From NCBI RefSeq assembly GCF_000143415.4, contig NW_003314283.1, positions 382,752-446,751 of the forward strand: 64,000 nt of DNA, given 5' to 3'. Shown here in pieces: positions 3,712-26,372 of the stretch. Every line of letters begins with the position of its first letter. Position 1 is the stretch's first letter. The notes under the pieces are model-generated. The model was not told where the DNA came from. It was given only the letters and a program-made list of their open reading frames with translations, and ran no database searches. Origin of the DNA: Selaginella moellendorffii. Taxonomy: Eukaryota > Plantae > Lycopodiophyta. A program made the position numbers and the translations under genes.

Positions 3712-6202
3712 TGTAGCACACGTGGTTTTGACCCTTTATCTTATGGTGATTTACCATAGGATAACACCACAAAGCGGAACCTAAACCCTCTTTGTGCCAC
3801 GTGACAGATGCCACGTGTCCATGCCACGTGTCCATAGGAACCCGAGGTTCAGGGCCTTGGGCCACTGAACGAAGGAACGGTGCCAAACTCCCAAGCATGA
3901 AGCCAAAGAGTGATGGAACCGAACCACGGAGCAACTCCCAAGCATACAGCCCAAGAAGTGAAGGGACAGGAGCCCGGAGCGACTTGGAACAGTCCTGGAG
4001 CAACCAGCATCCCAATGCCAAGACCAGCACACAAAACGGAGCCAAACAGAGTCTGGCGCTATTTCGGCATACCGGTGGCCTAATGCGAGGATATGGGTAC
4101 TCCACCAGCTAGCATGGAATAGAACTTGGGCTTAGACCCAAGCCGGATGCAGAACAAGGACAGGCACGCAAGCGGGAGCTAGACTATGCCTCAGGTTGGT
4201 CAGCCATGCCCGACCTACCCACTATCCCTACTATACATTTGGAACCCCCCACAGCCCCCCCCCCCCCCCCCCCCTTGAGGAACACACGCTTTGGGCTTTC
4301 ACCCCAAGCCTCCTTTAGTATCAGGAGTTAGTCTCTGGGACAAGCTCGAAACTTACTAAATATGGAATGGCGTTAGATTGCGAATTTGGACACGGGACGA
4401 ACACCATTGTGTTCAGACCGATCTCTACATTCCGTAAATATGCCAAATGAGCAAATCTGGACACTTTCCATAAATAGTAGTTGGGACCGAAATGAGACTA
4501 ACACAAAGGGCATGATAGCGAGGGTGTTTGGCAGACACGGTAAGCTATCATTTGGCGATATTGAGGGACCAACTGTAGCGCACCTTATCTCTCTCCCCTT
4601 AAGCCAACTGGAAAAGGGGCAATTGCTTGATAAAAGAGCCTTTAGTGGCTATTTTATCCCCATTTATCCCCCAAGGTTCCAAGGATCCACGGTGACAGTA
4701 TATCCAAATCTCATCCTATGATCACATGCATTACACTCACCCCCCTACTGAGCCAAGGGGACCGATCTCTACATTCCGTAAATATGCCAAATGAGCAAAT
4801 CTGGACACTTTCCATAAATAGTAGTTGGGACCGAAATGAGACTAACACAAAGGGCATGATAGCGAGGGTGTTTGGCAAACACGGTAAGCTATCATTTGGC
4901 GATATTGAGGGACCAACTGTAGCGCACCTTATCTCTCTCCCCTTAAGCCAACTGGAAAAGGGGCAATTGCTTGATAAGAGAGCCCTTAGTGGCTATTTTA
5001 TCCCCATTTATCCCCTAAGGTTCCAAGGATCCACGGTGACAGTATATCCAAATCTCATCCTATGATCACATGCATTACACTCACCCCCCTACTGAGCCAA
5101 GGGGACCAATCTCTACATTCCGTAAATATGCCAAATGAGCAAATCTGGACACTTTCCATAAATAGTAGTTGGGACCGAAATGAGACTAACACAAAGGGCA
5201 TGATAGCGAGGGTGTTTGGCAGACACGGTAAGCTATCATTTGGCGATATTGAGGGACCAACTGTAGCGCACCTTATCTCTCTCCCCTCAAGCCAACTGGA
5301 AAAGGGGCAATTGCTTAATAAGAGAGCCCTTAGTGGCTATTTTATCCCCATTTATCCCCCAAGGTTCCAAGGATCCACGGTGACAGTATATCCAAATCTC
5401 ATCCTATGATCACATGCATTACACTCACCCCCCTACTGAGCCAAGGGGACCGATCTCTACATTCCGTAAATATGCCAAATGAGCAAATCTGGACACTTTC
5501 CATAAATAGTAGTTGGGACCGAAATGAGACTAACACAAAGGGCATGATAGCGAGGGTGTTTGGCAAACACGGTAAGCTATCATTTGGCGATATTGAGGGA
5601 CCAACTGTAGCGCACCTTATCTCTCTCCCCTTAAGCCAACTGGAAAAGGGGCAATTGCTTGATAAGAGAGCCCTTAGTGGCTATTTTATCCCCATTTATC
5701 CCCCAAGGTTCCAAGGATCCACGGTGACAGTATATCCAAATCTCATCCTATGATCACATGCATTACACTCACCCCCCTACTGAGCCAAGGGGAACCAGCA
5801 CCTTCATTTCCGCACTCAATCTACCAATCCTTCCATTGTGTAGACCAGCTATTCAGCTATTATTATGAATAGCAATGGATACCTTCGTCCGTGGATACTC
5901 CACACAAGAGGAAGGATGTACGCATGGATGCCCAATACGTACGATTTCAAATTTAGGGGTTTTGCTCAAGGGTATATTATACTTTTAAGTAGCCACTAAT
6001 CAATGGGAATTGAACCCGTGTCATTTTCTCTGATACCAACTGTAACACACCTTATCTCTCTCCCCTTAAGCCAACTAGAAAAGGGGCAATTGCTTGATGA
6101 GAGAGCCCTTAGTGGCTATTTTATCCCCATTTATCCCCCAAGGTTCCAAGGATCCACGGTGACAGTATATCTAAATCTCATCCCATGATCACATACGCTA
6201 CA
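3712..6202 (-). mobile_element. Non-autonomous composite LTR/TRIM insertion with 5-bp TSD CTATA
   Basis: Termini TGTAGC...GCTACA. CTATA at 3707-3711 and 6203-6207. Removing the insert restores gag colinearity with the intact copy. Met-type PBS complement (CTCTGATACCA) lies next to the LTR at 6041. Confidence 0.85.
4416..5793 (-). repeat. Tandem array of four near-identical 344-bp TRIM units (162-bp LTR plus 182-bp spacer)
   Basis: LTR copies at 4574-4735, 4918-5079, 5262-5423 and 5606-5767, with a fifth at 6041-6202. Each of the four is preceded on the minus strand by a PPT-like AGGGGGGTGAG. Confidence 0.9.
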
Positions 6203-6826
6203 CTATACCACATGCTATGAATGCCGCCATCAATTGAGTTTAGTTGTTCAATTGCAATCTCATGGCATCAAGCAATTGCACCAATTGCTACTCCAGAGTC
6301 AAAGGAGAAGACTACTACTCTACCATGAAGATGAATGAAAAGGAAAGAGCAAAAGAAGAGAAATGAGAAAAAACTAAAAGGAAAGGGAGATCTAGACAAT
6401 GGAAAAGTTAAATTTTGAAAGGAAAGAACAAAAGAAATGAAATGAAAAAAACTAAATCTAAATGATACAAAAGCTAAATCTAAACTAAAATTCTAAATCC
6501 ACAAAGACAATGAAAAGTGCCCTTCACCTCCACCAATGTGAGTGTATAGAATATCGAAAGGGAATATAGAAAATGTGCATATCAATTAATTCAAAAACCC
6601 TAATTTATATACATGAGTGAATGGTCCAGATTGAAACTAATTCAATGTTACCAAAATCCCATTATGCTAATATTAGTATATGGCATTGTATTAGACCTCA
6701 CAGTTTGTAATTTATAAATACAAGATTAATTTAATTGCTTATCAACTACTAAATGATAGAATAACTAAAAAGGGTTTAAGAAAGTTTATAAATTATAATA
6801 TTAATTTAATGAATAACATTAATTAA

Positions 6827-6863
6827 TTCCCATTACCGGGATTTGAACCTGGGTCGCCTGGGT
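6827..6863 (-). pseudogene. Truncated tRNA-Glu remnant (3' half only)
   Basis: Matches the 3' half of the tRNA at 22266-22339. The anticodon and D arm are missing. Confidence 0.75.
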
Positions 6864-6942
6864 TATCGGCCGTTCAAAAAGGTTGATTACAGTTTATAAA
6901 CACAGATCCTTTTCCTATCAATAGGGTTTACTGCCGGGAATC

Positions 6943-8192
6943 ATGTGGTCGCTAGAGCCCAGCTTCTTCGATGAGCATGGAGCGCTTGTAAGTGATCTTC
7001 CAGCGCTAGATCCAGAGGATGCAGCTGCATGGCTCTCCGCTTCCACCACTTTCTCGACGTTGAGCATCACGGCAACGGTGAAGGGTGTTGCGTTGCAATC
7101 AGTGAATGCTGCAAACCGCTATGCGCTGGTGCACAGGTTGGAACAGAAGTATCCCGGCTGGATGCTGCTCAAAGTGGTGCTTGCGGAGGTGCACTATCTT
7201 CTGTTTGACAAAGCTGGGGCGCAGCAGCGGCTGCTCGATGTCCAAGATGCCATAGGGCGTGGTAAGGATGAGCAGCTGGACAGGGCCGTGCTGGAGCTTT
7301 CCAAGCTTATCCAGGAGGAGGACGATGGAGATGAAGATGACGAAGAGGCGGAGGTGGAAGAAGGCATGCAAGTCACTTCCTATGTGCGACCTCAACCTTT
7401 CTCGTCTGTTCCGTGTTCGTGGAGTGCGGAGGAGATTCGGCACAAGTGGCAGACAAGAACAGAAGTTGATCTTGCTGAGTTTGGCCGCTACGCAGCCATC
7501 ACCACAAACGTCCTGGAAGGAGTGTTTTCGCTTGAGGGTCGCAGCTTGTCGCGGCTGGTCAAGCGTGGATTCGACCTTGACTCGATCGAGGGTGTTCCTG
7601 CCACCAGTCGCATCAAGAGGAAGGCCAAGATCGTGGAAATCCTGGAGAACACACAGTCCTGCTTCGAATACCTCATGAAGAAACCTCATGCATTCTACCC
7701 CACAAGAGACTTATGGAGGAAAACAATCTCAACCACGAGGTTGACAATGGTCGGTTTTATGCTTGTTTCGTGCCTTGCGGCAGCTACCGCCGAGTTCCAT
7801 GCTATACAACCAATGGCAACTTGGAAACTCGATTTTGTCCTTGGAGGCAGATCCCTACGGAGATGCAGTGGTTCTTTGAAGAGGCTCGGCAAGCAATGTC
7901 CGACGACTCTGCTGATCCATTCTTGGTATCGGCCTGGCTACACATCGCGTTTCTCAGCATTCACCCCTTTGCTGATGGTAATGGTCGGGTGGGCCGAATG
8001 ATTTCCTCTCTTCCACTTGTCAAGGCAGGGCTCCCCCCTGTTGTGGTATCTTTCGAGCGGGAGCGGAAGAAGAAGTACTTCGCTGCACTGATAGAAGCTC
8101 GTAAGTCGGGTGATCTAGTACTGCTGGCTTCGTTTCTGAAGGAAGAGGTTGAGCTAGCAATCATTCACATCTCCAATTTGGATGATGCCTGA
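6943..8192 (+). pseudogene. Fic/Fido-domain protein, copy A, frameshifted
   Basis: Near-identical to 22462-23772. A 39-bp segment is replaced by 20 bp at 7681-7700, which puts HPFADGNGRVGR out of frame. Confidence 0.88.
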
Positions 8193-9194
8193 TCTTTGTC
8201 TTGAATTCGTAATTTCCTATTAAGCAATTTCTGGTTGTCAAGCTGAATTTCTAATGGAAAACTCTTCTTGCGTTGTGAAAAAAAATATCTCTCTCGTTTT
8301 TCTAGTTGGTTGGCATCAGTAAACGAGTTTCTTTGCAGATTGCAAGAGTCGAGTCTTGTTTCTTCTCAGGCATCATCCCCGATCCATAGGAAGTGCCTGC
8401 TTGCTCCCACAACTCACGTTGCCACTGCCAGTTCAGCACTCATGTGGGCAGCTGGAGTTGCACAAGTCTGGATGCTTTGCTGCAAGGTAGGAGGGATTTT
8501 GACCAATGTCATCAAGGTAAAGTATGGTAATTTAAATAATAATAAAGGTGTGGAAGCATTAGCAATGAGTTGTAGGATTTGACAATTATAAAACAACTAA
8601 GCAAAAGTTGCAAAATAATTGATTGAATTGGTAAAAATTAATTATCTGTAAACACTTGGTAGTGACCTAAGATTGATGCAAGGTTGCATTGTGTAACAAC
8701 AACACACTTGGGAGATTTCATAGTGCATGGCTCTAGAGCTGGATCTCACACTTTGCAATAGCAATGCAAAAGTTTCAATTCAAGTATTTTTTATGGCGTG
8801 CAATTCATAAAAGGGTGAGTGTTACTGTGGTAGATTTCACTCACAATACAGTGTCCATGTGGCAGTTTTTTATTGGTTCGGCATTAAATGTCATTTGGAT
8901 GCCTCATGGATGCCCCATGGATGCTGGCCGATGGGTCAATGATGTCCCCATAATATGAACAATGTGTTACACATAGATGCCACATATCATCAAGTTTGAC
9001 CCCATGACATGGGGATTCATCAAGTCATAGGGTTTAGGAGATGCTTCCTTGCCTTAGCGCCTTGCTTTAGTGCTCTGTTATTCGGCATATTTCTTGGTAG
9101 CAAATGTGGAAGGTAATTTGGTTTGCTAGTGAGTGGTTTGAAATGTTTTTGTGGGTAGTGTTGGAAGTGGCTTTGATTTACTACTTGATTGTTC

Positions 9195-10947
9195 TTTATG
9201 GACTTTCAAGTTCCTACCATGAATATAGTTCCCTCCCTAGTTTACTTCAAATTTGTGTCACTAAAACTTTTTCTTCCAGGTTTACTAGAAGACGTGGAGG
9301 AAGATGAAGTGGATGGCCTTCCATCCAATTTTAGTGATTCGAATTGTGGTTCCAGTATGGATAGTGACAACGATGCTCTCCCAAAGGTTTGTTTAGTTTC
9401 CAGCCTCCTAGATTCATGATTTGCACATTTCTAGGCCTTCTATAATTTTTTGCAATCAAGGGGATTCGGTAGTCCAGCTGCATTTGGCACTTGGATGCAC
9501 ATGAAGATCCTCGAGACTAAGACTACTATTTACCTCGCATGCTATCTTAGAATTTCCAAGCCAACATTGTACAAATACATGCAGCTTGTCGATCTAAATT
9601 GGAGAGGTGTATATTATAGAGTACCACCTGAAGAGGTACTTCATCACGTTCAAACTAACAATGCTATGAATCGAGGTGGCACAAACTGAGGGATTATCAA
9701 TTCTCGATCTAGTTGTCGAACTGGAGGATACCGATTTAGCCGACACCAAATTTGTGAGGCCTTAGCCACTCACGATCCAAGTAGGCTGGAACAGAGGCAC
9801 ATGACAAGGATTCGACGACGGATTTATAGGAATGAGGAGGCTTATGCACTTTGCTATATGGATTGTGAGTATTCTTTCATTTCTGTTTTTTTGTCAGCAC
9901 ATGTGGTAATATGTTTATTGTAGCATATTGCAAGTTTGTAAGCTATGGTTTCTATGTACATGCCATTATTTGCGGGGCAACTCATTATATTGTAGCTTGC
10001 AAGCTAGCTACCTCCAAAGAATCCCATACAATATTTAACATATATGCGTAGACTGTTCGTCGATTTGGAAGGCCCAAGCACATCCGGAGCGACAATGCTC
10101 CAGAGCACAATGAGGTTGAGAGGGACATGATCCGCTGTTGGGGTCCTGCAGCTAGGAGCTTCATACGTGGGATATCAACATGTAACCAGGTATTCACAGC
10201 GTTAGAGTTTTTCCAAATAAGGACTCATAAGACTAAATCAAATTTGTTTTACAGCGTATAGAGCATTTGTGGAGAGAGCTCTTTGAGCGCGTGGTGTGGT
10301 TTTATAAGCACCTTTTTGAGTCCATGGAAGATATAGGAATTCTCGATGTATCTAATCCATGGCACAACCAGAGTCTACGTTGTGTCTTTGCTCCGTACCT
10401 CAAGAAGGATATTTCACACTGAGTTGCAACCTCCATGAGGTCCGTCCGTATCGATGTGGTGATTACTTCAAACCATCTCATGTTCCTGCAAACTTATTTC
10501 AACCGATGGAACGAGAGCTTGGGTAACAATTTTGGTAATGTTATAGAATTCCTAATAAAATGTGCTTTTGTAGGATTATGCCGAGTGTTGGTGGAAAAGA
10601 TATTGAAAACCTTCCCGGACCATTTCTCTTTAATGTCGAAGGTGCAACTTTGTCAGAGGTAATCTTTAGAGCAAGAATACAATAATTTCTTTAAATCTAT
10701 TTTGTTGTGCTTGGCTACCTTACAGGCTCTTGGCACTGTTCGAAACCAGGCATTTTTGATGCATCGGGAGGGACTCAACTTAGACAAGCAATATCTACTT
10801 CATTTGGATCTAACAATGGAGTGTGCAATGGCTGATGTTGCGGGTGTAGATCTACCACTTTACATCGAGAGTGCCTTGCCTACAGCAACACCAGTGAAGC
10901 GACAAGCTTTGGAAAAATTATACTTGGCCATACTCGGAGAAAATTGA
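9195..10947 (+). pseudogene. Spliced IS3/rve-type DDE transposase with premature stops
   Basis: Hand-spliced exons give an HTH-like LRISKPTLYKYM, then HDP..RIRRRIY..ALCYMD (D at 9861), GFYVHAIICG, FGRPKHIRSDNAPEH (D at 10091) and SFIRGISTCNQ/RIEHLWRE (E at 10261). Stops at 9687, 10049 and 10420. The start is uncertain. Confidence 0.8.
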
Positions 10948-11212
10948 GTGTTCTTTAGTGTACATTTCAAATTAAAATTAAAATTCTGATTTGTTCAATT
11001 TTAGGGTTCCCACGTTTGGGATTAGGGTTTTCACCAAGTCCCACCCATATTAATTGTGCCTTCAACACGGGGCGATTTCATTTTATGACATGATTTTGTC
11101 AATGGTTCATTCGTTCTTCCAATCGATTTGTGTCATCTAACCGGAGGCAAGGCTTCTAGTGCACACTCCCCCGATCACAAGATCACCGCCCAAGCGAGAG
11201 CGCCACAGCTGT

Positions 11213-14200
11213 GATGGTGGGTAACTTCTCCTCGATCAGGTTTGCATAACTAATCCTTTGTGGTTTCTAGGCTAGAAGCAAGAATGCCGCACGCCTCAAC
11301 AGCAGTAGACACTATGCAGGAAACACCTCGCGAGCACGCAGCCAAGCACTCGATGTTCCGCAATTGGTACAGCCAACAGTCCCGTGAGACACACGCCAGC
11401 CACTTGATTTTCTAAGCTCCACAGCAGGGACATCAACTCCAACAGCATCCCATCCACAGCTCCTGACTGCATTTGAGCAAGCAGAGCGCCGCCTAACATT
11501 GCATACATTGCAACATATGCAGAACCTCCAGCATGTTTCATTCTCCTCGCCTTCCTTGGAAAGTAGCAGCCCGCGCATTCGAAATGAGCAAGTCCGGACA
11601 CCTCATGCCCACGGTGTTGTCCAATCTGGAATGCTGCCACCAACACTAACTACAGGACGTGCTCACGGAATCCCATATAGTGCCACTGCTACCAGCCCCG
11701 CAACTCCACCAACCACTACAACTCTTGCAACTCCATCTACCAGTACAAGTGCCAATACCTGGCCATCTACCTCCCGAAGCAACAAGCTGTCTAGCTCGGT
11801 AAGTTTTTCATTTGTACCCGTGTTTTTTTCCATGTGTTTTTCTGCGTAGGGTGAGTTGACAATGCCGCCACACCAGCGAGCTTATAGTTCCCCATCAGCA
11901 TTCCACAACTACTCCCAAGGATCGACATCATCATTTAGTGGAGCTTCGACATCCAGATATGTTCAAGCTGACCCTCAAGGCGGGCTGCCATGTGAGCCAC
12001 AGGTATAACATGACCCCATGCACTCTTCATTTTTTTCTTCTTTGGATTTGTTTAACTCATTTTTGTTTCACTGTGCTAGACTCTCTCACTGCTTGTGGCT
12101 GCAGTGCACACCTATGCCGATAACAATCGGCAGTCCTTATCTTGTCGTCGTGGACGTCGTGGCAGTCGATCCAAAGTCATTTGTGGGATGTTGTCTACGA
12201 CACCCTTGGTCCCCCGGCCATTCACCACAGTTCTTGTCACCAAGTGGATTGCAATCCCAAAGACTTGGCATGTACACTTATATGGGCGGAAAAGAGAGCC
12301 ATCTGTGAAGGTGACGGAACTTGACGAGTTGGCAGTGGACCTCCCAGAGTGTCTCATATGGGGTGGCTTATACTCCAATATTCTTTTCCAGCCCAGCACA
12401 GCCCAACATGCGTTTCTACTATCACTCCAAGCCTCAGGAATCCAACCTTCATCCATGACCAACCCAGGAGCATTTGTCCAGCGTGCAAGGCAGTTCAATG
12501 GTGGTGAGGCCCATACCGAGTCTGCAAAATTTGGCCTCAGCTCTATCCGGCCTTGCTACTGGCCTCCTCAAACATCATGGGGAGCTATAGCAAACAAGGC
12601 CAATGGCAATCAGGCAACAGTAATATATTTATACAATGTTATGGAGCATCTTACTAACAAACATTGGCTAAGTTATCAAAAGCAGGCCTGAGCACTCGAG
12701 GAGAAGGATGTTTGTGAACGTAAGTCATTTTTTTTTAAGTTCCCTCCTCACAAATATATGTTGTGGTCTTTGCAGTTGTAGCTATTACAAATACCTTGAC
12801 TGCAAATGATGATCCAAAGCCAGCCACGTAGGAACCAAACCCTTACGAGAATAATGAAGAAGAAGACTCTGCGGATGAAGAGGACATTCTTCCATTACCA
12901 GAAGAAACTCTCCCCATACAAGACAACATGGACATTAGTGGAGTCAAAGAACAAAGTGATGGTGGGGATGAACCGCACCAAGGATCTCCGGAGACATCCT
13001 TGTCACCAGAGATAGTGGCTCCAGGCCATGCGGCTGGTAAAAAGCATTAACATAAATGAATATTTTCTTCATTTTCTAATTTCTGAGTGCAGATAGGCCA
13101 ATGGTAGTGTATGACAGTGATGGCAGAGGCCTTGAAGACCATGGTGTGCCTCCACCCCCCTTTCTAGAGGGAAGTAGCTCCACTCCATTTACTCTTATGG
13201 AGTTGCTTGACAACTTTTTTACAGTAGAGTAAGATAATTGAAAATTGTGCCATTCAAAATTGAACTAATGTTTGCATGTAGATTGTTGGAGCGTCAACAA
13301 AGATGGATTGATGCCACCAATGCATTTAATGAAGCTATTCAGTTAACCACTTAGGATAGTGCCAACTTCATCATGCTGCAGATTGAGGAGGTTTCTACCT
13401 TACAGGATGCCACCACAACCCTTGAGGTGAGGGCACAGGGGGATGCTAAAGTTCTCTCATAGGTGCAGTGGCTGAAACACAAGCTTCTTGGTTGCTTTGG
13501 CGTGGAAAGCACAAGTGACGAGGAGATGCTAGACACTATTGCTAGACACCCTGAATTCCATTGGGTTGGCGATGAAATATTTTTGCGGCGCGTGCTTTTC
13601 AACCAAACCATGCCTCATTGGCAAGATTGGGAGAGTCTTCTCCTTAAGTTTGGCCTTTCAGAAGCACAGTACAAGGATGTGTTTTGTGACAACACAATCC
13701 AACAGCTCCTTGCTGAAGTAAGTATTAATGTACCTCCTTCAATTCTTGAGTCCACAATAGCATGGTTCATTGAGAAGAGGTATGTGTATCTATTTCTTAG
13801 CACTTAGTACTATCTTATGGTTTTGTGCAGGGACCTACATAGGAATTGGGCGGCTGCACAACAATTGAGAGAACTATTTGACACTACTAAAACACCGTAT
13901 TGTAAGTTCTCTCATTTTTGCATCGAGAAGGCCATGCTTCGGCCATACAGACTTGCTTGTACACGTTTGAGGCCATCTCGCATTCTAGTAAGCAATGAAT
14001 TGCCTATGAATTGGAGTTACCTCACTTGTCCTTCTAGATTGCACCAAACAATGAATTCAGTTGTTTCCAATTTGCCTTCAATACTAATCTCCGCACACCG
14101 AATTACAAAGTGGTCTATGCGTCTGAGATTGGAGGAGCTTTGGTGTGGGAGGAATCCACAATAGATGCGGGTGGGCCACATGCAAAAGCCATTAGGGAGG

Positions 14201-15343
14201 CTGTTCACCAGATTCCAGGATCAATAAGTTTAATTTTCACTTGGCTCACTAGAGTAACTTTGTGTTACAAACGCGTGGACTGTTTGTGCTTAGGGAAAGA
14301 GCCACATATTGGCATCCTAAGATGCCAGTGCATTTTAGGACATTGCAACAAGAAGAGCGGGATGTGGTAAGTTAAGTTTAAAGCACAAGTTTTATATACT
14401 CCTCATTTTTATATGCACAAGCTATCTTTGTGGGATGGTTGCTATTCCAAGCATTCGAATGTAATGCACAGGTTTCTCACAGATGTACAATTGCAACATT
14501 GGCAATTGCAACTAGAGAGGTTCCAAACGAGGATGACTGACGACTTGCCCGAGGAGGACTATATGAGATGGACCTCAAGGCATGCACACTGCATATCTGG
14601 AATGCACTCAACCAATTGCGAGGTGCATCAAGCCTAAAGGAGGAGGGCGATCGGCACAAGTCTGTGGATTCCATCCTAGAGAACCCTGCAATTACTGACT
14701 ACAATGCAGTGCTTGAGTCTAGACTCACTGAACTTGGTGAAGGTTATGAGGAGGCTGTGGAGGCATGCGTGGCTGCGGTGGTTTGGCATTACCTATTCAT
14801 TGAGCCAAATGTAGTGGGAGACTTACTCCGAGATGGCTTCCAACACTTAATGCGCATGGAAGCTCGTCAGAGGCCTCACAAGAGTCCAGCATTGCTAGGT
14901 GGGCTTTCACTCATTGGGACAGATGCTTTGTTACAGGTCTTCTGGGTAAGGACGATCATTCCTCACGCGGAGTTCATCAACTGCCTGATCTTTGATCAGG
15001 ACTTTGGAGAGAACTTCCGCAGCTGGATTGTGGACATCATTCGAGGTAACTATTTACTTTCACAAACAACTAAAACTCTTGTATGTTTGAACATTTTATA
15101 GATATAAGCCTGAAAGAGTTATCCAAGTTCCATCACTTTGTGGTTGATTCTTCAAAGTTCCGACTGGGAGAGCCTATTTGGATCCAAGTTGAGAGACAGA
15201 GTACATCATCTACTTGATTTCCCAGGTTCTCCACATGCACACGAGAAGTTTTCTTCCCTTTAACATACCTGTCAAAGGAGTGGACCAAACACAAGATCCA
15301 CCAGACACTCCAAAATCTAGAGAGCTTGTATGGATTGGGCTGA
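11213..15343 (+). pseudogene. Multi-exon cargo gene(s) ending in a HECT-like E3 ubiquitin ligase domain
   Basis: S/T/P-rich N-terminus. EESTIDAGGP at about 14150-14178. Last exon reads ELSKFHHFVVDSSKF...*FPRFSTCTREVFFPLTYLSKE...YGLG-stop, with Cys at 15236. Several internal stops; exon structure and start are uncertain. Confidence 0.62.
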
Positions 15344-15483
15344 TGTTGTGGAAGTAATGTAGACACTTTCACAATAAAAATAGATAATTGTCTTGAAATA
15401 TGTTTCACACTTTGAAAGAGACTCTTTCCAGTTCATTGGCGAAGTTAAAAGTAAGAATATTCAAAATATTCCACAAATGCCCA

Positions 15484-16074
15484 TTATAGGCACTTGCAGC
15501 CCTTGGTACCCTTTTGGCTTATGCTTGTCTCACCAAGCGTAATCACTATAGCTTCCAAAGCAGCTCCCAATTTAGGTTCTGGGTCAAAACTATCAAGTTT
15601 GGGTGCTATATGATGCCCATCCTCACTTGAGGAACTTTCAACCTGTTTGGTAGAACCAAAATCACCCTCTGGGTCTGTGAACTCGTCCTTGCTTGCATCT
15701 CGAGCAGTAACATATCCCTCGCTGTCGCTTTCTTCAGCAGGACCTTTCCCCTCGGTGATTGGCACAAGATTAGAAGTAGTCTTGGGCTGCCTTGTCGGAG
15801 GGATTGTCGAGCCTTGAGAGGAGGAGGCATCATATAGAATCCTCGATCCTGTCCCCTGTTGGATCCATTGTTGTGCCTCAAAGAAGTCATAAAATCCTCT
15901 CCAGTTTGCCATGCCAGGAGGAAACCTAGAAACCTCAAACATTGCAAAAGGGTTAGACCATATAGGAAACTGTTACAAATCTACTCTTACCAAAATGAGC
16001 ACAAGCTTCCAATCTCTGAAAACTCCAATTCTTTGGCCACAGCGCACGGCATATATTGGATAGTTTTGCCCCAT
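15484..16074 (-). CDS. Cargo gene with an RNase H1 N-terminal (Cauli_VI, hybrid-binding) domain and an acidic disordered tail
   Basis: Splicing out a short intron (acceptor uncertain) gives MGQNYPIYAVRCGQRIGVFRDWKLVLIL/VSRFPPGMANWRGFYDFFEAQQWI, which matches the YAVxxGxxxGIYxxW...FxxxxEA pattern. Confidence 0.65.
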
Positions 16075-17734
16075 GCTTGGAAACCCTTTTTACAAATTTC
16101 AAAATTTGAAACAGTTATGATTGGAAAATATTGTAAGTGTCCATTGTCATTGCTCTTCTCACCTAAATGTTACTACATGCAATTGCAACTTCCATATTCT
16201 CAAATCTCCTTCAGCATGCTCCTCTTGAGAGAACTCCAGGTTCAATTTGAAACAATTATAATTGGAAAATGTTGAAAGTGTCTATTGTTATCCTGAATGT
16301 TACTACATGTAATTGCAACTTCCACATTCTCAAATCTCCTTTAGCATGCTCCTCTTGAGAGAACTCCAAGTCCAAACATCAACACTATGCACCTTTGCAT
16401 AGTACATAATTGAAGTATGAGCCCCACCAATTCATCGAATTGGTTAGACTTCAACCTAATTTTGAGTCATATGCAAATCTTCTAAGCATCATGGTACAAA
16501 ACTCAAGTGTTGAGAGAGCTACACTGGAAATCAATTGCAACGAAAGATAAACTCAATGGGATTAAAGACATGACTCCAAATAGTATATATCCATGGCTTT
16601 GCAATGGAGCTAGATGGAGTTCACTTACGTTTGCTATGAACACTATGTTAAAAGAGGCGTGCCTAGGTGTGACTCAATTTCCAACATTTTCCAGCTATGA
16701 GAGCCCAGGAGTTCTTCGCGTCCATGGTGAATGCACCTCAAGAATCACAGTGCAAGACGGAGGAAGCAAGAGGATTCAACGATTGCTTAGACGCTGTGGC
16801 GGGTAACAATGGGAGCATCGATGATTGCGAGCAGCACAGCAGCGGTCGGCAATGTGGGGAGGATACGGCGATGGCTGTCGATGACAATCAAGGCTGCCAC
16901 ACTCCCAAATTCTAGATGGAGTCCACTTACGCTTGCTATAACACTATGTTCAAAAAGGTGTGCCAAAAAAGGATAATTTAATTCTTTTGCCATGAGCGCC
17001 AAGAGCAAGATGTGAAAACATAGTGCTCTAGATAAGGTAGTATGGTATGCAATTTAGTCGATTGTCCATTTGGTTTGCAACATTAACAACTTGCTCGAAT
17101 GCATGGGATGAATGGGTCTATGGGCCAAGAATGGCTCCATTCCATACATAGCATGGGTCATTGCTATGGGCATGATGCCCCATCCGGGGCATAAGGATTG
17201 GATATTCGTAAAATATTCTATGCCTGTGTTTTTTTCACACTCATAATACACGTAGACCAATAACAGGCATACACGTGGTGTGAGTGAAATCCACCATTGT
17301 AAAATCCACCCTTTTATGAATTGCATGCCATATTTTTAAACTAACTTAATGCATTTAGAACTTTAACACTCACTCAAGAGATGGTGCAAATTGAACCTGT
17401 CAGGTTGCATGGCATATGAAAGGAATTATCCCTTTCCATTGAGGTAAGAATTGCCACTTAAATGCTAAAAACAAATGATAAGAAAGGAATTATCCTTGGT
17501 AAGAAGGCAACAAAGCTTGCTATGCTGGAGGTTGCACACTTGGGATGCTAAAAACATATGATAACTCTGTCCATCCATTGGTAGATTTTAAAATTATTTT
17601 AATTTGGACTTTATGTATGGCTTAGTATATAAGAGGTGCCTATACCACGTCTTTTAGTTACACGTGTACTTAAACACTAAAACTTAATTATCCTCACTCA
17701 CACTTTTAAATTAATTAATTGAGTAGAGCTATAG

Positions 17735-18691
17735 ATGGAAATGATTATATTACTAATTATTTCTTTTCCTTTATGCATTTTAGCACCACCACCATTTGGA
17801 TATATATTTCCTGATCAGCCTATGACGCTTTACTCCAGTGATCCTGATGCACTATCTAGAGATAATTTTAAAGCTATATTGAAGAATATAGATGAATATA
17901 TTGGCTCCCTGAAAGGAGAAAAAACTCTTCCAACAAAGAGTTACTCAAGAACGTTTTATATTACTGATAATGTATATTGTATTTTAACATTATGGATTCA
18001 TTTGCCACTGGGTTTAAATGCAAAAGAACCTACTTATACATTATGCAAGATAATCCCACTACAATATGGATATAATGGATATGAAGCTTATAATATTTTT
18101 CACAGGCTTCGGGATTATATTTCCACGAATGCAACCACTATAGGTAAAGACCAAAATAAAAGGTATTTTGGAGAATTTGAAGCTAATTTAAGAAATTTTG
18201 CTATGCAATATAATGTTTATGGTTCACATCCTCCAACATTTTATAATAATTTTATTATTGAAAAAATTTCTTATAATAATTATGATGGTTATTGTGATAT
18301 TTATAGATCATCTCTTANNNNNNNNNNNNNNNNNNNNNNNNNNNNNNNNNNNNNNNNNNNNNNNNNNNNNNNNNNNNNNNNNNNNNNNNNNNNNNNNNNN
18401 NNNNNNNNNNNNNNNNNNNNNNNNNNNNNNNNNNNNNNNNNNNNNNNNNNNNNNNNNNNNNNNNNNNNNNNNNNNNNNNNNNNNNNNNNNNNNNNNNNNN
18501 NNNNNNNNNNNNNNNNNNNNNNNNNNNNNNNNNNNNNNNNNNNNNNNNNNNNNNNNNNNNNNNNNNNNNNNNNNNNNNNNNNNNNNNNNNNNNNNNNNNN
18601 NNNNNNNNNNNNNNNNNNNNNNNNNNNNNNNNNNNNCTATCTTTATATTTATGATACAGAGAAAGGTGAAATTTTATGGTCAGCTCATTAA
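17735..18691 (+). CDS. Secreted AT-rich protein with a C-terminal bulb-type (B) lectin-like domain, copy A
   Basis: Hydrophobic signal peptide, no introns seen, and the frame is preserved across a 319-N gap. The domain is inferred from paralog B (SLVSPYTNYRLTM..CQL, CFAHLDRTGHL, LEVSDNGYLYIYD..LW). Confidence 0.62.
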   Translation: MEMIILLIISFPLCILAPPPFGYIFPDQPMTLYSSDPDALSRDNFKAILKNIDEYIGSLKGEKTLPTKSYSRTFYITDNVYCILTLWIHLPLGLNAKEPTYTLCKIIPLQYGYNGYEAYNIFHRLRDYISTNATTIGKDQNKRYFGEFEANLRNFAMQYNVYGSHPPTFYNNFIIEKISYNNYDGYCDIYRSSLXXXXXXXXXXXXXXXXXXXXXXXXXXXXXXXXXXXXXXXXXXXXXXXXXXXXXXXXXXXXXXXXXXXXXXXXXXXXXXXXXXXXXXXXXXXXXXXXXXXXXXXXXXXYLYIYDTEKGEILWSAH

Positions 18692-19106
18692 CTAATATTC
18701 TTAATAACTCTAACAAATAATAATGCTTACAATTAAAGTTAAGATTTTACTTCTGTAATGATTTGAACTAATTACAAAACATCCATTACTCGATTAATCA
18801 TACTTATTAACCAATAATTAATAAATATAAATAGAATATTGATAATACATATCCCCTAAAGTGTATATGTTGGCTTTAACTACTTTTTTCCTACCTAGAG
18901 AACTTGCAAGAGAAAATATTGCTCTCTTTTTACTGCCACTAGCAGAGAACTTCCGCATCGTCAATTCGTCAGGTCCTTCTCATGGACCCTATTCATAAAT
19001 GTTTCTGATAGAATCTGCTAGATTCCCTGCGTATATAATATTTCTTTGTCGTAAAAATGGAATGAAAACACGCATCCAAAAGTCTTTCTTTGCCACGATT
19101 TTCTAC

Positions 19107-19206
19107 CTTATATATATGAGCAAGTGATTCGGATTGAAACCAATTTGACAACTACCAAAATCCCACTATGGTAATATTAGTATATGGCATCGTAGCCATA
19201 CACCTT
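19107..19206 (-). mobile_element. LTR remnant of the 49465-54446 gypsy family
   Basis: Reverse complement matches the first part of the 174-bp LTR. It has the same flank (ACAAGATTAATTTAATT) as the LTR ending at 6702. Confidence 0.7.
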
Positions 19207-22339: not shown

Positions 22340-22461
22340 TCAATGAAATTTTGGCAGTTCAAAAAGGTTGATTACAGTTTATAAACACAGATCCTTTTCC
22401 TATCAATAGGGTTTGTTATCAAAAACAATCAGTCCGAGAGAGAAAGAGACTGCCGCGAATC

Positions 22462-23772
22462 ATGTGGTCGCTAGAGCCCAGCTTCTTCGATGAGCATGGA
22501 GCGCTTGTAAGTGATCTTCCAGCGCTAGATCCAGAAGATGCAGCTGCATGGCTCTCCGCTTCCACCACTTTCTCGACATTGAGCATCACGGCATCGGTGA
22601 GGGGCGCTGTTTTGCGATCTGTGAATGCCGAACAGCGTTATAGGCAATTGCACAGGGTGGAAAAGGAAAACAAGTACCCTGGCTGGATGCTACTCAAAGT
22701 GGTGCTTGCGGAAGTGCATTATCTTTTGTTCGACAAAGCTGGGGCGCAGCAGCGGCTGCTGGATGTCCAAGATGCCATAGGGCGTGGTAAGGATGAGCAG
22801 CTGGACAGGGCCGTGCTGGAGCTTTCCAAGCTTATCCAGGAGGAGGACGATGGAGATGAAGATGACGAAGAGGCGGAGGTGGAAGAAGGCATGCAAGTCA
22901 CTTCCTATGTGCGACCTCAACCTTTCTCGTCTGTTCCGTGTTCGTGGAGTGCGGAGGAGATTCGGCACAAGTGGCAGACGAGAACAGAAGTTGATATTGC
23001 TGAGTTTGGCCGCTACGCAGCCATCACCACAAACGTCCTGGAAGGAGTGTTTTCGCTTGAGGGTCGCAGCTTGTCGCGGCTGGTCAAGCGTGGATTCGAC
23101 GTTGACTCGATCGAGGGTATTCCTGTCACCAGTTGCATCAAGAGGAAGGCCAAGAGGAAGGCCAAGAGGGAGGCCAAGAGGGAGGCCAAGATCGTGCAAA
23201 TCCTGGAGAACACACAGTCCTGCTTCGAATACCTCATGAAGAATTCTGCTGCTTTCAATGACTCGACGATCCAAGATGTACACAAGAGACTTATGGAGGA
23301 AAACAATCTCAACCACAAGGTTGACAATGGTCGGTTTTATGCTTGTCTCGTGCCTTGTGGCAGCTACCGCCGAGTTCCATGCTATACAACCAATGGCAAC
23401 TTGGAAACTCGATTTTGTCCTTGGAGGCAGATCCCTACGGAGATGCAGTGGTTCTTTGAAGAGGCTCGGCAAGCAATGTCCGACGACTCTGCTGATCCAT
23501 TCTTGGTGTCTGCCTGGCTACACATCGCGTTTCTCAGCATTCACCCCTTTGCTGATGGTAATGGTCGGGTGGGCCGAATGATTTCCTCTCTTCCACTTGT
23601 CAAGGCAGGGCTCCCCCCTGTTGTGGTATCTTTCGAGCAGAAGCGGAAGAAGAAGTACTTCGCTGCACTGATAGAAGCTCGTAAGTCGGGTGATCTAGTA
23701 CCGCTGGCTTCGTTTCTGAAGGAAGAGGTTGAGCTAGCGATCATTCACATCTCCAATTTGGATGATGCTTGA
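22462..23772 (+). CDS. Fic/Fido-domain protein (putative AMPylase), copy B, intact and intronless
   Basis: Canonical HPFADGNGRVGR motif, with an upstream TNVLEG matching the (S/T)xxxE(G/N) inhibitory motif. Confidence 0.92.
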   Translation: MWSLEPSFFDEHGALVSDLPALDPEDAAAWLSASTTFSTLSITASVRGAVLRSVNAEQRYRQLHRVEKENKYPGWMLLKVVLAEVHYLLFDKAGAQQRLLDVQDAIGRGKDEQLDRAVLELSKLIQEEDDGDEDDEEAEVEEGMQVTSYVRPQPFSSVPCSWSAEEIRHKWQTRTEVDIAEFGRYAAITTNVLEGVFSLEGRSLSRLVKRGFDVDSIEGIPVTSCIKRKAKRKAKREAKREAKIVQILENTQSCFEYLMKNSAAFNDSTIQDVHKRLMEENNLNHKVDNGRFYACLVPCGSYRRVPCYTTNGNLETRFCPWRQIPTEMQWFFEEARQAMSDDSADPFLVSAWLHIAFLSIHPFADGNGRVGRMISSLPLVKAGLPPVVVSFEQKRKKKYFAALIEARKSGDLVPLASFLKEEVELAIIHISNLDDA

Positions 23773-24534
23773 TCTTGTCTTGAATTCGTAATTTCCTATT
23801 AAGCAATTTCGATCTCTTTTTTCAAGACTAAGCTTTAATTTCCATTAGAAATTCAGCTCGACAACCAGAGTTGATTGGCATCAGTAAAAGAGTTTCTTTG
23901 CAAATTGCAAGAGTCGAGTCTTGTTTCTTCTCAGGGCATCATCCCCGATCCATAGGAAGCGCCTGCAACTCACGTTGCTAGGGTCCCTGCCAGTACAGTG
24001 CTCATGCGGGCAGCTGGAGCTGCACAGATCCAGACGCTTGCTGCAACGCGGGAGAGGTTCTGACGAAGGTCATCAAGGTTCTGTAAACACTTGGTAGTGA
24101 CCTGGGATTGATGCCAGGTTGCGTCGTGTAGCAGCAGCACACTTGGGAGATTTCACAGTGCATGGCTCTAGAGCTGGAACTCACACTTCGCAACACTCAC
24201 TCAAGAGCTGGTGCAAATTGAACCTGTTTATTTTATGATCAGGAGAGCAGGTTGCATGGTATATGAGAGGAATTATCCCTTTCCATTGAGGTAAGAATTG
24301 CCACTTAAATGCTAAAAACAAATGATAAGAAAGGAATTAAAAGGCAACAAAGTTTGCCATGCTAGAGGTTGCACAGTTGCACATATGATAACTCCGTCCA
24401 TCTATTGGTGGATTTTAAAATTATTTTAATTTGGACTTTATGTATGGTTTAGTAAGCATGTCTCTTCAACACGTGATGATCATCTACTTAAACAATAAAA
24501 ATTTATTATCCTTTTAGATTAATTAATTGAGTAG

Positions 24535-25480
24535 ATTATATTACTTATTATTTCTTTTCCATTATGCATTTTAGCACCACCACCATTTGAATATATATTT
24601 CCTGATCAGCCTATGACGCTTTACTCCAGTGATCCTGATGCACTATCTCGAGATAATTTTAAAGCTATATTGAAGAATATAGATGAATATATTGACTCCC
24701 TGAAAAGAGAAGAAACTCTTCCAACAAAAAGTTACTCAAGAACGTTTTATATTACTGATAATGTATATTGTATTTTAACATTATGGATTCATTTGCCACT
24801 GGGTTTTAATGCAAAAGAACCTACTTATACATTATGCAAGATAATCCCACTACAATATGGATATAATGGATATGAAGCTTATAATATTTTTCGCAGGCTT
24901 CGGGATTATATTTCCACGAATGCGTAAAGACCAAAATAAAAGGTATTTTGGAGAATTTGAAGCTAATTTTAGAAATTTTGCTATGCAATATGATATTTAT
25001 GGTTCACATCCTCCAACATTTTATAATAATTTTATTATTGAGAACAATACTTATCATAAACTTAATAATTATGATGGTTATTGTGATATTTATAGATCAT
25101 CTCTTATTGGTGGTGATATTAACAAACATGGATCTACCATATTAAATGGAAATAGCTTAGTCTCACCATACACAAATTATAGATTGACAATGAAAAATTG
25201 TCAATTATTCTTTTATCAAATTAAAAGTAAACAAACTATCTGGAAAAGTAAAGAGTTTAATTTATTGACTTCAAACAAAGACATTAATTCAGAAATCTTA
25301 AATGATTGTTTTGCACATCTAGACAGAACTGGCCATTTGACTATAGTAAATAATAACTTTGTAATATGGGAATTAATATCACAACATTCTAAATATCAAG
25401 CAGGATTAGAAGTATCAGATAATGGCTATCTTTATATTTATGATACAGAGAAAGGTGAAATTTTATGGTCAGTTCATTAA
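24535..25480 (+). pseudogene. B-lectin-like gene, copy B
   Basis: Paralog of 17735-18691. The start codon region is deleted and an 11-bp deletion near 24925 shifts the frame. Confidence 0.75.
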
Positions 25481-26372
25481 TTATATTCTTAAAATCTCTA
25501 ACAAATTGAAGTTAAGAGTTTGCTTCTGTAATGATTTGATTTTAGTATAATTAATATTCCTAAAATATCCATTACTCGATTAATCATACTTATTAACACA
25601 TAATTAAGAAATATAAATAGAAATATAATGTTTCATCCAGTGCTCAGTTTCTCGTGAAAACTCTTGAAGGAAATGGCTTGACAAAAGAAATCCTCGTCAC
25701 ACCCATGGAAATAATATTGACAATATATATCCCCTAAAAGTGTATATGTTCGCTTTAACTATTTTTTCCTACCTAGAGAACTTGCAAGAGAAAATGTTGC
25801 TCTCTTTTTACTGCCACTAGAATTGCTCAATTCGTCGGGTCCTTCCCATGGACCCTATTGTTTCTGATAGAATCTGCTAGATTCCCCGCGTATATAATAT
25901 TTCTTTGTCGTGAAAATGGGAGTAAACGCGCATCCAAAAGTCTTTCTTTGCCACGACTTCCTGCGTTCGATTATTTTGCTCTCGAGTCTTCACGGCTACG
26001 CGTCACAGAAATTGGACCAGCGACTGGTCAGTGACCACTGTTTACGCCCTTGATTTTCCTCGAAGGCGATTGTAGCGAAATATATTCTCGCTATGCCGCA
26101 GTGTTCCTTATCTAGGGCTAGATCAGCGAGCTGGATTCTCGCAGGAAAGATCGCGCGGCCGGCCAGGAATCGGCGCCGATGGAGGTGAGAATTCGAGGCG
26201 CCGGCAGGTTTTCACAAGATCGGCATCGAATTGCTACCTAGGGAAGAAGATCTCCAAGAATTCGCAAGGATTTTGCTAGATCGTGTCGAATTCCTGGTGG
26301 ATAGGTGAAATATCGCGCGGCAAGCTGAGGTAGAGCCGATAATCCATCGAATTCCAGCCGGATCTGGGAGCT

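What the first reader, a model, noticed from the sequence alone, without database searches (positions are those of the whole stretch)
8792..17332. 8.5-kb IS3EU-like DNA transposon in a land plant carrying HECT-like ligase and RNA:DNA hybrid-binding cargo
Seen in the sequence: 54-bp TIRs (47/54 identical) with TAT...ATA ends, TTTTT on both sides, and no such insert at the paralogous site near 24193. The transposase is hidden from the ORF track by introns and stops, but hand-splicing gives HTH + D(9861) / RSD(10091) / NQRIE(10261). Recalled knowledge, to be verified: this motif set and TAY..RTA termini fit the IS3EU superfamily, which I know mainly from animals and fungi and not from the standard plant TIR superfamilies. 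Inference: a multi-gene mobile unit of transposase, ubiquitin ligase and nucleic-acid-binding protein. This copy is decayed.
Basis: partly seen in the sequence, partly recalled or inferred. Interest (0 to 1): 0.92.

Follow-up and report, generated by a model that had tools for sequence, protein, structure and literature searches.

The report
Dead GingerRoot transposon carrying HECT gene
This 8.5-kb stretch is a dead copy of a multi-copy cut-and-paste transposon of the known IS3EU/GingerRoot kind in the spikemoss Selaginella moellendorffii; beside its transposase it carries a very divergent ubiquitin-ligase (HECT) gene and a small RNA:DNA-hybrid-binding-domain gene that I could not find described for any transposon.

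Summary
Arms of 54 nt (47/54) lie at 8792-8845 and 17279-17332, end in TATGG..CCATA and are flanked by TTTTT on both sides. The genome is Selaginella moellendorffii. I fetched eight more loci of the same family (88-97% identical). Five independent insertions give 5-bp target duplications, not the usual 6 bp.

It is dead here: three stop codons and a 7-bp deletion.

The cargo is real and colinear in every full-length copy:
- The HECT reading rests on a borderline Pfam C-lobe match (21-24.8 bits) and on language-model and predicted-structure matches (TM 0.57-0.64 over about 345 residues). This copy's HECT gene has six stops.
- The 177-aa gene on the opposite strand passes Pfam's threshold for the RNase H1 hybrid-binding domain once a conserved 57-nt intron is removed. 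It is intact here.

The novelty claim fails. IS3EU-type elements in land plants were published as GingerRoot in 2019 (lycophytes, bryophytes). This scan had already noted other copies of this family in this genome. New here are the cargo pair and the 5-bp duplication. Cargo function is untested; no RNA reads were found.

The parts
8787..8791 (.). left target-site duplication, TTTTT
   Evidence: The 5-bp length is backed by other insertions: GCTCA (L004), GAATG (L006), ACTAA/ACTAT (L007), CAAGC/CAAAC (L009).
8792..8845 (+). left terminal inverted repeat, starts TATGGCG
   Evidence: The same left-type arm occurs in L001, L004-L009.
9279..10944 (+). Decayed, spliced DDE transposase gene (annotated model SELMODRAFT_413916). 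Exons lie at about 9279-9386, 9435-9864, 9924-10189, 10255-10523, 10575-10658 and 10750-10893. The HTH is in 9435-9686. Catalytic codons are D 9861, D 10091 and E 10261. Stops are at 9687, 10049 and 10420, and there is a 7-bp deletion in 10255-10523.
   Evidence: Pfam rva_4 and weak HTH_17 matches. Exon mapping from paralogue models and splice sites. Own gene model found.
11214..15343 (+). Long gene (annotated model SELMODRAFT_413917) with a Ser/Thr/Pro-rich and acidic N-terminal part, then a divergent HECT domain at about 13832-15340. The putative catalytic Cys codon is 15236-15238. In-frame stops are at 11385, 12689, 12829, 13352, 14538 and 15215, all C>T or G>A changes.
   Evidence: tblastn of paralogue proteins. 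Exon map and stops. HECT evidence.
15484..16074 (-). Intact 177-aa gene (model SELMODRAFT_413918 is mis-spliced). Exon 1 is 15991-16074, the GT..AG intron is 15934-15990 and exon 2 is 15484-15933. It encodes an N-terminal RNase H1-type hybrid-binding domain (15865-16056) and an acidic, low-complexity tail.
   Evidence: The spliced product matches Pfam Cauli_VI over 2-44/44, E 1.1e-6, 29.3 bits against a cut-off of 21.
16103..16375 (.). Subterminal tandem duplication (about 140-nt units, 84%). A second repeated pair lies at 16610-16663 and 16912-16964.
   Evidence: The same repeats are present in all other copies.
17279..17332 (-). right terminal inverted repeat, ends GCCATA
17333..17337 (.). 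right target-site duplication, TTTTT
24185..24200 (.). Paralogous site without the element. It also lacks about 62 nt of the sequence that flanks the element.

Best explanation
Window 8792-17332 is an inactivated copy of an 8.5-kb autonomous-type DNA transposon family of the IS3EU/GingerRoot superfamily in Selaginella moellendorffii.

Shown:
- 54-bp imperfect TIRs ending TATGG..CCATA, and 5-bp target duplications.
- Multiple colinear copies at unrelated loci.
- A spliced transposase with an N-terminal helix-turn-helix, no HHCC zinc finger, and an rva_4 integrase core with D-56-D-34-E spacing.
- A large gene ending in a divergent HECT domain.
- A convergent small gene with an RNase H1-type hybrid-binding domain.

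Inferred:
- The family moved by cut-and-paste. The transposase would bind the conserved 26-nt tips and the inner GATTTCACTCACA block, excise the element and integrate it with a 5-bp staggered cut.
- The two accessory genes were integral parts of the active element, not recent captures of host gene fragments.
- My preferred guess at their role is counter-defence or target handling. The HECT protein would mark a host factor, for example a silencing component, for degradation, and the hybrid-binding protein would act at R-loops or double-stranded RNA made from the element.

This copy inserted after the local segmental duplication and has since decayed, mainly by C>T and G>A changes.
For: Structure:
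- TIRs and flanks.
- Organism and own gene models: 100% match to SELMODRAFT_413918 on a 2.09-Mb scaffold of GCA_000143415.2.
- Full-length colinear copies: L004 at 6237-14694, L006 at 9665-18156, L007 at 6247-15008 and L009 at 8967-19133, plus end-truncated L005 and L008. Identity to each other and to the window is 88-97%.
- TSDs are GCTCA, GAATG, TTTTT, ACTAA/ACTAT and CAAGC/CAAAC.

Transposase:
- rva_4 scores up to 66.8 bits against 16 bits for rve.
- The nearest language-model clusters are rva_4 proteins of Basidiomycota, Chordata, Cnidaria and Ascomycota.
- Fixed differences between two subfamilies are 1 non-synonymous to 6 synonymous (omega about 0.05, p 7e-4).

Literature:
- IS3EU has TA..TA ends and fungal families end TAYGG..CCRTA (PMC10045372, PMC12730594).
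- GingerRoot occurs in Selaginella with a mean size of 8.6-8.9 kb (PMC6839031).
- Fungal IS3EU families carry accessory genes, with the last gene in the opposite orientation (PMC12730594).

HECT:
- The Pfam C-lobe match lies at the extreme C-terminus in two paralogues: 24.3 and 24.8 bits against a cut-off of 23.9. The window copy read with X at its stop gives 21 bits.
- 76 of the 100 nearest Atlas clusters are HECT (score 0.95). Predicted-structure TM is 0.57-0.64 over 336-356 residues.
- A Cys lies 34 residues from the C-terminus.

Hybrid-binding domain. Its intron is conserved in six copies.

Capture: no host parent gene was found. All 13 phmmer matches among 1.84 billion representatives are 75-93% identical. 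Every one I traced by name or locus is an S. moellendorffii gene model.
Against: - The TSD is 5 bp, whereas IS3EU/GingerRoot usually give 6 bp. The TIRs are 54 bp, whereas S. lepidophylla GingerRoot has 100-150 bp.
- I built no tree with reference IS3EU/GingerRoot transposases, because no reference sequences were available.
- The cargo shows no significant purifying selection. For HECT, fixed differences are 11 non-synonymous to 6 synonymous (omega 0.53, n.s.). For the hybrid-binding gene they are 3 to 3.
- The HECT N-lobe has no sequence-level match, and my own AlphaFold model was useless (pLDDT 34).
- No RNA reads were found in three RNA runs. The tool marks this as no test.
- Every copy examined has a broken transposase.
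Confidence: 0.85

Rival explanations
1. The HECT and hybrid-binding genes are passenger DNA picked up once from the host (Pack-type capture). They were then amplified passively, with no role in the element's life.
For: A considerable share of S. lepidophylla GingerRoot elements (22 of 77) carry captured gene fragments (PMC6839031). The cargo shows no significant purifying selection between copies or subfamilies. All copies carry stops in at least one of the two cargo genes.
Against: Captured fragments in GingerRoot are 84-1654 bp pieces that are 79-98% identical to a parent gene. Here the units are whole multi-exon genes with complete domains. No parent or any relative outside the family turned up among 1.84 and 5.8 billion proteins. 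The HECT keeps the Cys at the canonical distance from the C-terminus. The hybrid-binding domain keeps a full-length Pfam match and a conserved intron.
Confidence: 0.2
2. The 'HECT' region is not a HECT domain. It is an unrelated helical protein that language-model and low-confidence predicted-structure searches mislabel.
For: The Pfam match covers only the last 88 profile positions and is at or below threshold. No PDB sequence match was found. The Atlas model of the protein has pTM 0.48 and pLDDT 0.53, and the AlphaFold single-sequence model failed.
Against: All ten structure rows, each standing for a different set of Pfam families, and 76 of the 100 feature hits are HECT. The structure matches align about 345 residues, the full bilobed length. 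A feature score of 0.95 is reached by about 1 in 100 shuffled proteins. The Pfam match sits exactly at the C-terminus with the Cys in register in two paralogues and in the window. UniRef names SELMODRAFT_407700 a HECT domain-containing protein.
Confidence: 0.08
3. The stretch is not a transposon of its own. It is part of a segmental duplication or a composite of two unrelated elements that happens to be bounded by an inverted repeat.
For: L001 and L003 show the left and right halves rearranged around position 13310. One insertion with the same flanks recurs at three loci (L001, L003, L009), so some copies spread by duplication of larger segments. The paralogous site is not a clean empty site.
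Against: Five loci with unrelated flanks carry the same ends at exactly TATGG/CCATA, with matching 5-bp duplications. They are contiguous across 13310.
Confidence: 0.03

Closest known systems
GingerRoot DNA transposons of Selaginella lepidophylla (Cerbin et al. 2019, PMC6839031)
   Same: Same host genus. TIR-bounded cut-and-paste element with TA..TA ends. Integrase-related DDE transposase without the HHCC, YPYY or GPY motifs. Size of about 8.5-8.9 kb. Multi-copy, mostly old and silent copies.
   Different: The TSD is 5 bp here against 6 bp. The TIR is 54 bp against 100-150 bp. The paper names no HECT, ubiquitin or RNase H-related gene and does not mention S. moellendorffii. It reports only captured gene fragments.
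IS3EU superfamily (Repbase; Kojima and Bao 2023, PMC10045372; Kojima 2025, PMC12730594)
   Same: Termini are TAYGG..CCRTA with TIRs above 30 bp, as in rust-fungus IS3EU. The first catalytic D lies 100-300 residues from the N-terminus, behind an HTH-like region. The layout has several genes with the last one in the opposite orientation.
   Different: Fungal families carry TET/JBP dioxygenase and alpha-kinase genes, not a HECT ligase and a hybrid-binding-domain protein. Their TSDs are 6 bp. The hosts are fungi and animals.
Canonical eukaryotic HECT E3 ligases (Pfam PF00632)
   Same: Predicted bilobed fold of about 350 residues at the C-terminus. A Cys lies 34 residues from the end, and an aromatic residue lies at position -4.
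   Different: Sequence similarity is barely detectable and limited to the C-lobe. The N-terminal region has no known substrate-binding domain. The gene sits inside a transposon. Activity is untested.
RNase H1 N-terminal hybrid-binding domain / caulimovirus protein VI domain (Pfam PF01693)
   Same: A full-length 44-residue domain match above the curated threshold.
   Different: It stands alone, with no RNase H catalytic domain. It is followed by an acidic disordered tail and is encoded by a DNA transposon.

Membership tests
IS3EU/GingerRoot superfamily | DDE transposase with an IS3/IS481-like integrase core, no HHCC zinc finger, and an HTH-like N-terminus | tested here: met
   rva_4 gives E 1.5e-12 on the window piece and 66.8 bits on paralogue P0023, against 16 bits for rve. 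HTH_17 gives a weak match at 9435-9686. No HHCC is seen in the translated N-terminus. Spacing is D-56-D-34-E.
IS3EU/GingerRoot superfamily | Terminal inverted repeats ending TA..TA (TAYGG..CCRTA in fungal IS3EU) | tested here: met
   TATGG..CCATA in the window and in the other termini found in L001-L009, except one TAAGG end in L003. Criteria come from PMC10045372 and PMC12730594.
IS3EU/GingerRoot superfamily | 6-bp target-site duplication ('usually', per PMC10045372; 6 bp in PMC6839031) | tested here: not met
   Three insertions have perfect 5-bp duplications (TTTTT, GCTCA, GAATG) and two match at 4 of 5. No 6-bp reading fits.
IS3EU/GingerRoot superfamily | Transposase groups with reference IS3EU/GingerRoot proteins in a tree | not testable with these tools
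   No reference sequences could be fetched, and the supplements are not held. Indirect evidence only: the nearest Atlas clusters are rva_4 proteins of fungi, fish and cnidarians.
GingerRoot as described in S. lepidophylla | TIRs of 100-150 bp | tested here: not met
   The ungapped TIR is 54 nt. By eye, only weak gapped similarity extends to about 90 nt.
HECT E3 ubiquitin ligases | Pfam HECT match at the gathering threshold | tested here: inconclusive
   Only the C-lobe matches (profile positions 213-301 of 306). Sub-sequences of paralogues give 24.3 and 24.8 bits against 23.9. Whole proteins give 20.7-21.4 bits. The window copy gives 21 bits.
HECT E3 ubiquitin ligases | Bilobed HECT fold of about 350 residues at the C-terminus | tested here: met
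   TM is 0.57-0.64 over 336-356 residues to ten HECT cluster models, and 76 of 100 feature neighbours are HECT. Both sides are predicted models and the query model is of modest confidence.
HECT E3 ubiquitin ligases | Catalytic Cys about 35 residues from the C-terminus; thioester formation with ubiquitin | tested here: inconclusive
   A Cys lies 34 residues from the end, within STCTRE, in P0005, P0018 and the window (codon 15236-15238), inside the Pfam-matched stretch. Its catalytic role was not tested.
RNase H1 hybrid-binding domain (PF01693) | Full-length domain match above the curated cut-off | tested here: met
   29.3 bits against 21, positions 2-44 of 44, after removing the 57-nt GT..AG intron. 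That intron is conserved in six copies. Unspliced models reach only E 0.01-0.27.
RNase H1 hybrid-binding domain (PF01693) | Binds RNA:DNA hybrids or dsRNA | not testable with these tools
   This needs a binding assay.

The most novel reading that the evidence does not exclude
The HECT ligase and the hybrid-binding-domain protein form a transposon-encoded counter-silencing module. The small protein would find R-loops or double-stranded RNA made at the element, and the HECT protein would ubiquitinate a host silencing factor there. Such a module may be an old, so far overlooked companion of IS3EU/GingerRoot elements in lycophytes and beyond.
Probability: 0.12. Interest if true: 0.8.

Novelty: new variant of a known kind. 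Interest (0 to 1): 0.42.

Why it matters
IS3EU/GingerRoot elements in lycophytes are already published, so the headline claim adds nothing. Two points may be worth a specialist's time.

First, this S. moellendorffii family makes 5-bp rather than 6-bp target duplications. That widens the definition of the superfamily.

Second, every full-length copy carries two complete accessory genes: a very divergent HECT ubiquitin ligase and a stand-alone RNA:DNA-hybrid-binding-domain protein. I found no report of either in any transposon. Known transposon accessory genes that fight host silencing include fungal TET/JBP dioxygenases (PMC12730594) and, from my own memory, VANC in Arabidopsis VANDAL elements. 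A ubiquitin ligase would be a new way for a DNA transposon to act on its host.

The practical gain is smaller. Three annotated S. moellendorffii 'genes' (SELMODRAFT_413916, 413917 and 413918), and their paralogues I checked, lie inside transposon copies and should be masked.

Tried and rejected
- Other copies in the window: none at DNA or protein level.
- Distant relatives of the HECT piece: phmmer against 1.84 billion representatives gave only 75-93% identical paralogues.
- Word-indexed searches for the HECT region and the transposase: only S. moellendorffii proteins, even at E 10.
- PDB sequence searches with one protein and with a family profile: nothing meaningful.
- AlphaFold2 on the HECT region without a deep alignment: pLDDT 34, unusable, so no fold search was run on it.
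- Atlas search with the mis-spliced hybrid-binding gene model P0002: no useful neighbour.
- RNA reads from three 2026 RNA-seq runs on 10150-16149: zero reads. The tool marks this as no test, so the introns remain predictions.
- A locus expected to hold a more divergent family (P0029, L009): it was another copy of the same family.
- Selection tests on the cargo (singleton against shared changes, and fixed differences between subfamilies): underpowered and not significant.
- GingerRoot supplements for reference sequences: not held.
- Rejected readings: an LTR retrotransposon (inverted rather than direct terminal repeats, TA rather than TG..CA ends); Polinton (no polymerase, capsid or ATPase genes, and only 8.5 kb); Ginger1/2 (no HHCC, and rva_4 far outscores rve).


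Full report
**1. Observation**

The window holds a 54-nt inverted repeat at 8792-8845 and 17279-17332 (47/54). It is much the longest and best inverted pair within 8000-18500. The 26-nt tip occurs only at these two places in the window, against 0 expected from shuffles. The element starts TATGGCG and ends GCCATA, and TTTTT stands on both sides.

The flanks belong to a local segmental duplication. 6868-8758 matches 22353-24193 and 17365-18317 matches 24192-25106, at about 86%. The second copy has no element. It also lacks about 34 nt left and 31 nt right of the element. So it shows absence of the insert but is not a clean empty site.

**2. Organism and family**

The small ORF on the minus strand is 100% identical to SELMODRAFT_413918 of Selaginella moellendorffii. 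The window's other two gene models are SELMODRAFT_413916 and 413917.

Through paralogous gene models I fetched nine loci of assembly GCA_000143415.2:
- L004, L006, L007 and L009 hold full-length copies.
- L005 and L008 have lost the right tip.
- L001, L002 and L003 are rearranged or partial.

Copies are 88-97% identical and colinear over the whole 8.5 kb. Every terminus starts at TATGG, except one TAAGG. The left-type and right-type arms differ from each other in the same way in all copies, so the 7 mismatches of the TIR are a family trait and not decay.

The target duplications are TTTTT (window), GCTCA (L004), GAATG (L006), ACTAA/ACTAT (L007) and CAAGC/CAAAC (L009). They are 5 bp long, and no 6-bp reading fits. 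L001, L003 and L009 share the same flanks, so that one insertion was later copied as part of a larger segment.

A DNA run of the species gave 2055 short contig pieces at 90% identity or more on 6 kb of the element, with mostly transition differences. This fits a family of dozens of copies.

**3. Transposase**

Pfam rva_4 (integrase core) matches the window pieces 10052-10258 and 10237-10419 (E 1e-4 and 1.5e-12). In paralogue models rva_4 reaches 66.8 bits against 16 bits for rve.

The gene is spliced:
- The exon ending HMD (D codon 9861) is followed by a 59-nt GTGAGT..TAG intron at 9865-9923.
- The next exon carries RSD (D codon 10091) and ends NQ.
- A 65-nt intron at 10190-10254 precedes RIEHLW (E codon 10261).

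The spacing is D-56-D-34-E. The N-terminus has a weak HTH match and no HHCC.

The copy is dead, with stops at 9687 (TGG>TGA), 10049 and 10420 (TGG>TGA) and a 7-bp deletion in exon 10255-10523. All other copies examined also have broken transposase genes.

Between two subfamilies the transposase exons show 1 non-synonymous and 6 synonymous fixed differences (omega about 0.05, p 7e-4). This is the signature of an enzyme that was under selection while the family was active.

The nearest protein-language-model clusters are rva_4 proteins of Basidiomycota, Chordata, Cnidaria and Ascomycota. That is the published range of IS3EU/GingerRoot.

**4. What is known**

- IS3EU has been a Repbase superfamily since 2013, with TA..TA ends and usually 6-bp duplications.
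- GingerRoot was described in 2019 from Selaginella lepidophylla. It has 77 intact elements of 3.9-12.9 kb (mean 8.6-8.9 kb), 6-bp duplications and 100-150-bp TIRs, and it was detected in lycophytes and bryophytes (PMC6839031).
- IS3EU and GingerRoot group together with 99% bootstrap (PMC10045372).
- Rust-fungus IS3EU families end TAYGG..CCRTA, exactly the ends seen here. They carry accessory genes (TET/JBP, alpha-kinase), with the last gene in the opposite orientation (PMC12730594).

An IS3EU-type element in a land plant is therefore not new. Other agents of this scan had already reached the same reading on other copies of this family in this genome. I tested their points myself.

**5. HECT gene**

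The annotated model starts at 11214. It runs through a Ser/Thr/Pro-rich part, an acidic part and a helical part, and ends at 15343.

Paralogue P0005 (747 aa, from L004) maps onto 12641-15340 in ten exons with short introns.

Evidence for a HECT domain:
- Pfam HECT matches only the C-lobe, at the very C-terminus. Whole proteins give 20.7-21.4 bits. C-terminal sub-sequences give 24.3-24.8 bits against a cut-off of 23.9. The window's own reading, with X at its stop, gives 21 bits.
- The Atlas search gave HECT families for 76 of the 100 nearest clusters (score 0.95). Predicted-structure TM scores are 0.57-0.64 over 336-356 residues against ten different HECT cluster models.
- A Cys sits 34 residues from the end (window codon 15236-15238) and a Tyr sits at position -4.
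- UniRef already calls SELMODRAFT_407700 a HECT domain-containing protein.

Evidence that is missing:
- PDB sequence searches and my own AlphaFold run gave nothing.
- No relative outside the family exists at E below 0.001 among 1.84 billion representatives. It is therefore not a recent capture of a host UPL-type gene.

In the window the gene has six in-frame stops (11385, 12689, 12829, 13352, 14538, 15215). All are CGA>TGA or CAG>TAG, the pattern expected from deamination of methylated cytosine.

**6. Hybrid-binding-domain gene**

On the minus strand, ATG at 16074 opens an 84-nt exon. It is followed by a 57-nt GTAAG..AG intron (15934-15990) that is conserved in six copies, and then by a 450-nt exon ending at 15484.

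The spliced 177-aa product matches Pfam Cauli_VI (RNase H1 N-terminal domain) over positions 2-44 of 44, at E 1.1e-6 and 29.3 bits against a cut-off of 21. The annotated model uses a different acceptor and loses half the domain, which explains why unspliced queries scored only E 0.01-0.27.

The rest of the protein is acidic and of low complexity. No RNase H catalytic domain follows.

This reading frame is open in the window. In the other five copies aligned it is broken.

**7. Selection and expression of the cargo**

Changes shared among copies and changes fixed between subfamilies give omega 0.5-0.7 for the HECT gene and 0.3 for the small gene. The counts are too few to differ from neutrality.

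Three RNA-seq runs labelled with the species gave no read on 10150-16149 in about 9 million reads each. The tool marks this as no test. Function of the cargo therefore rests on inference: whole genes, complete domains, a conserved place and order in all copies, and no host parent.

**8. Verdict**

This is a real but dead copy of a known kind of transposon, in a genus where that kind was discovered. It differs from the published descriptions in two ways: a 5-bp target duplication, and two accessory genes, a divergent HECT ligase and a stand-alone hybrid-binding-domain protein. I found neither gene mentioned with IS3EU, GingerRoot or DNA transposons in the searchable literature. The mechanism proposed for the cargo, counter-defence by ubiquitination of a host factor, is a guess.

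Noticed in passing
window 6868-8758 and 17365-18317 versus 22353-25106: A local segmental duplication at about 86% identity surrounds the element.
   Followed up: partly
window 8534-8644; 59416-59526; L003 17994-18124: A 111-nt dispersed repeat (75-80%) sits in the left flank. It interrupts the paralogous alignment and is probably a small non-autonomous element.
   Followed up: no
window 4568-6204: A 170-nt unit recurs at least five times at 93-95% identity, the first four spaced 344 nt apart (4568, 4912, 5256, 5600, 6035). This is a tandem array left of the duplicated segment.
   Followed up: no
L001 816-13486; L003 1516-13618; L009 5950-19133: The same insertion, with the same flanks (..aaacaagc | caaacaaaattgtgg..), is present at three loci. 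In L001 and L003 the halves are rearranged around element position 13310, and L009 has an extra solo right end at 6004. So this copy spread by duplication of a larger segment, not by transposition.
   Followed up: partly
L002 8928-9049: A terminus of a related but distinct family (TATGGTGTGTAATTTGTAAAAGCGG...) lies 145 nt upstream of a right end of this family. S. moellendorffii seems to hold more than one GingerRoot-type family.
   Followed up: no
window 18001-19000, 25001-26000 and 32001-33000: Very AT-rich kilobase stretches (GC 0.19-0.30) alternate with GC-rich ones (28001-29000, GC 0.69).
   Followed up: no
window 9687-15215: Nine of the ten stop codons in the element's broken genes are single C>T or G>A changes (CGA>TGA, CAG>TAG, TGG>TGA). 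For the tenth, at 10049, I did not read the codon. This fits decay by cytosine deamination in a methylated, silenced element.
   Followed up: partly
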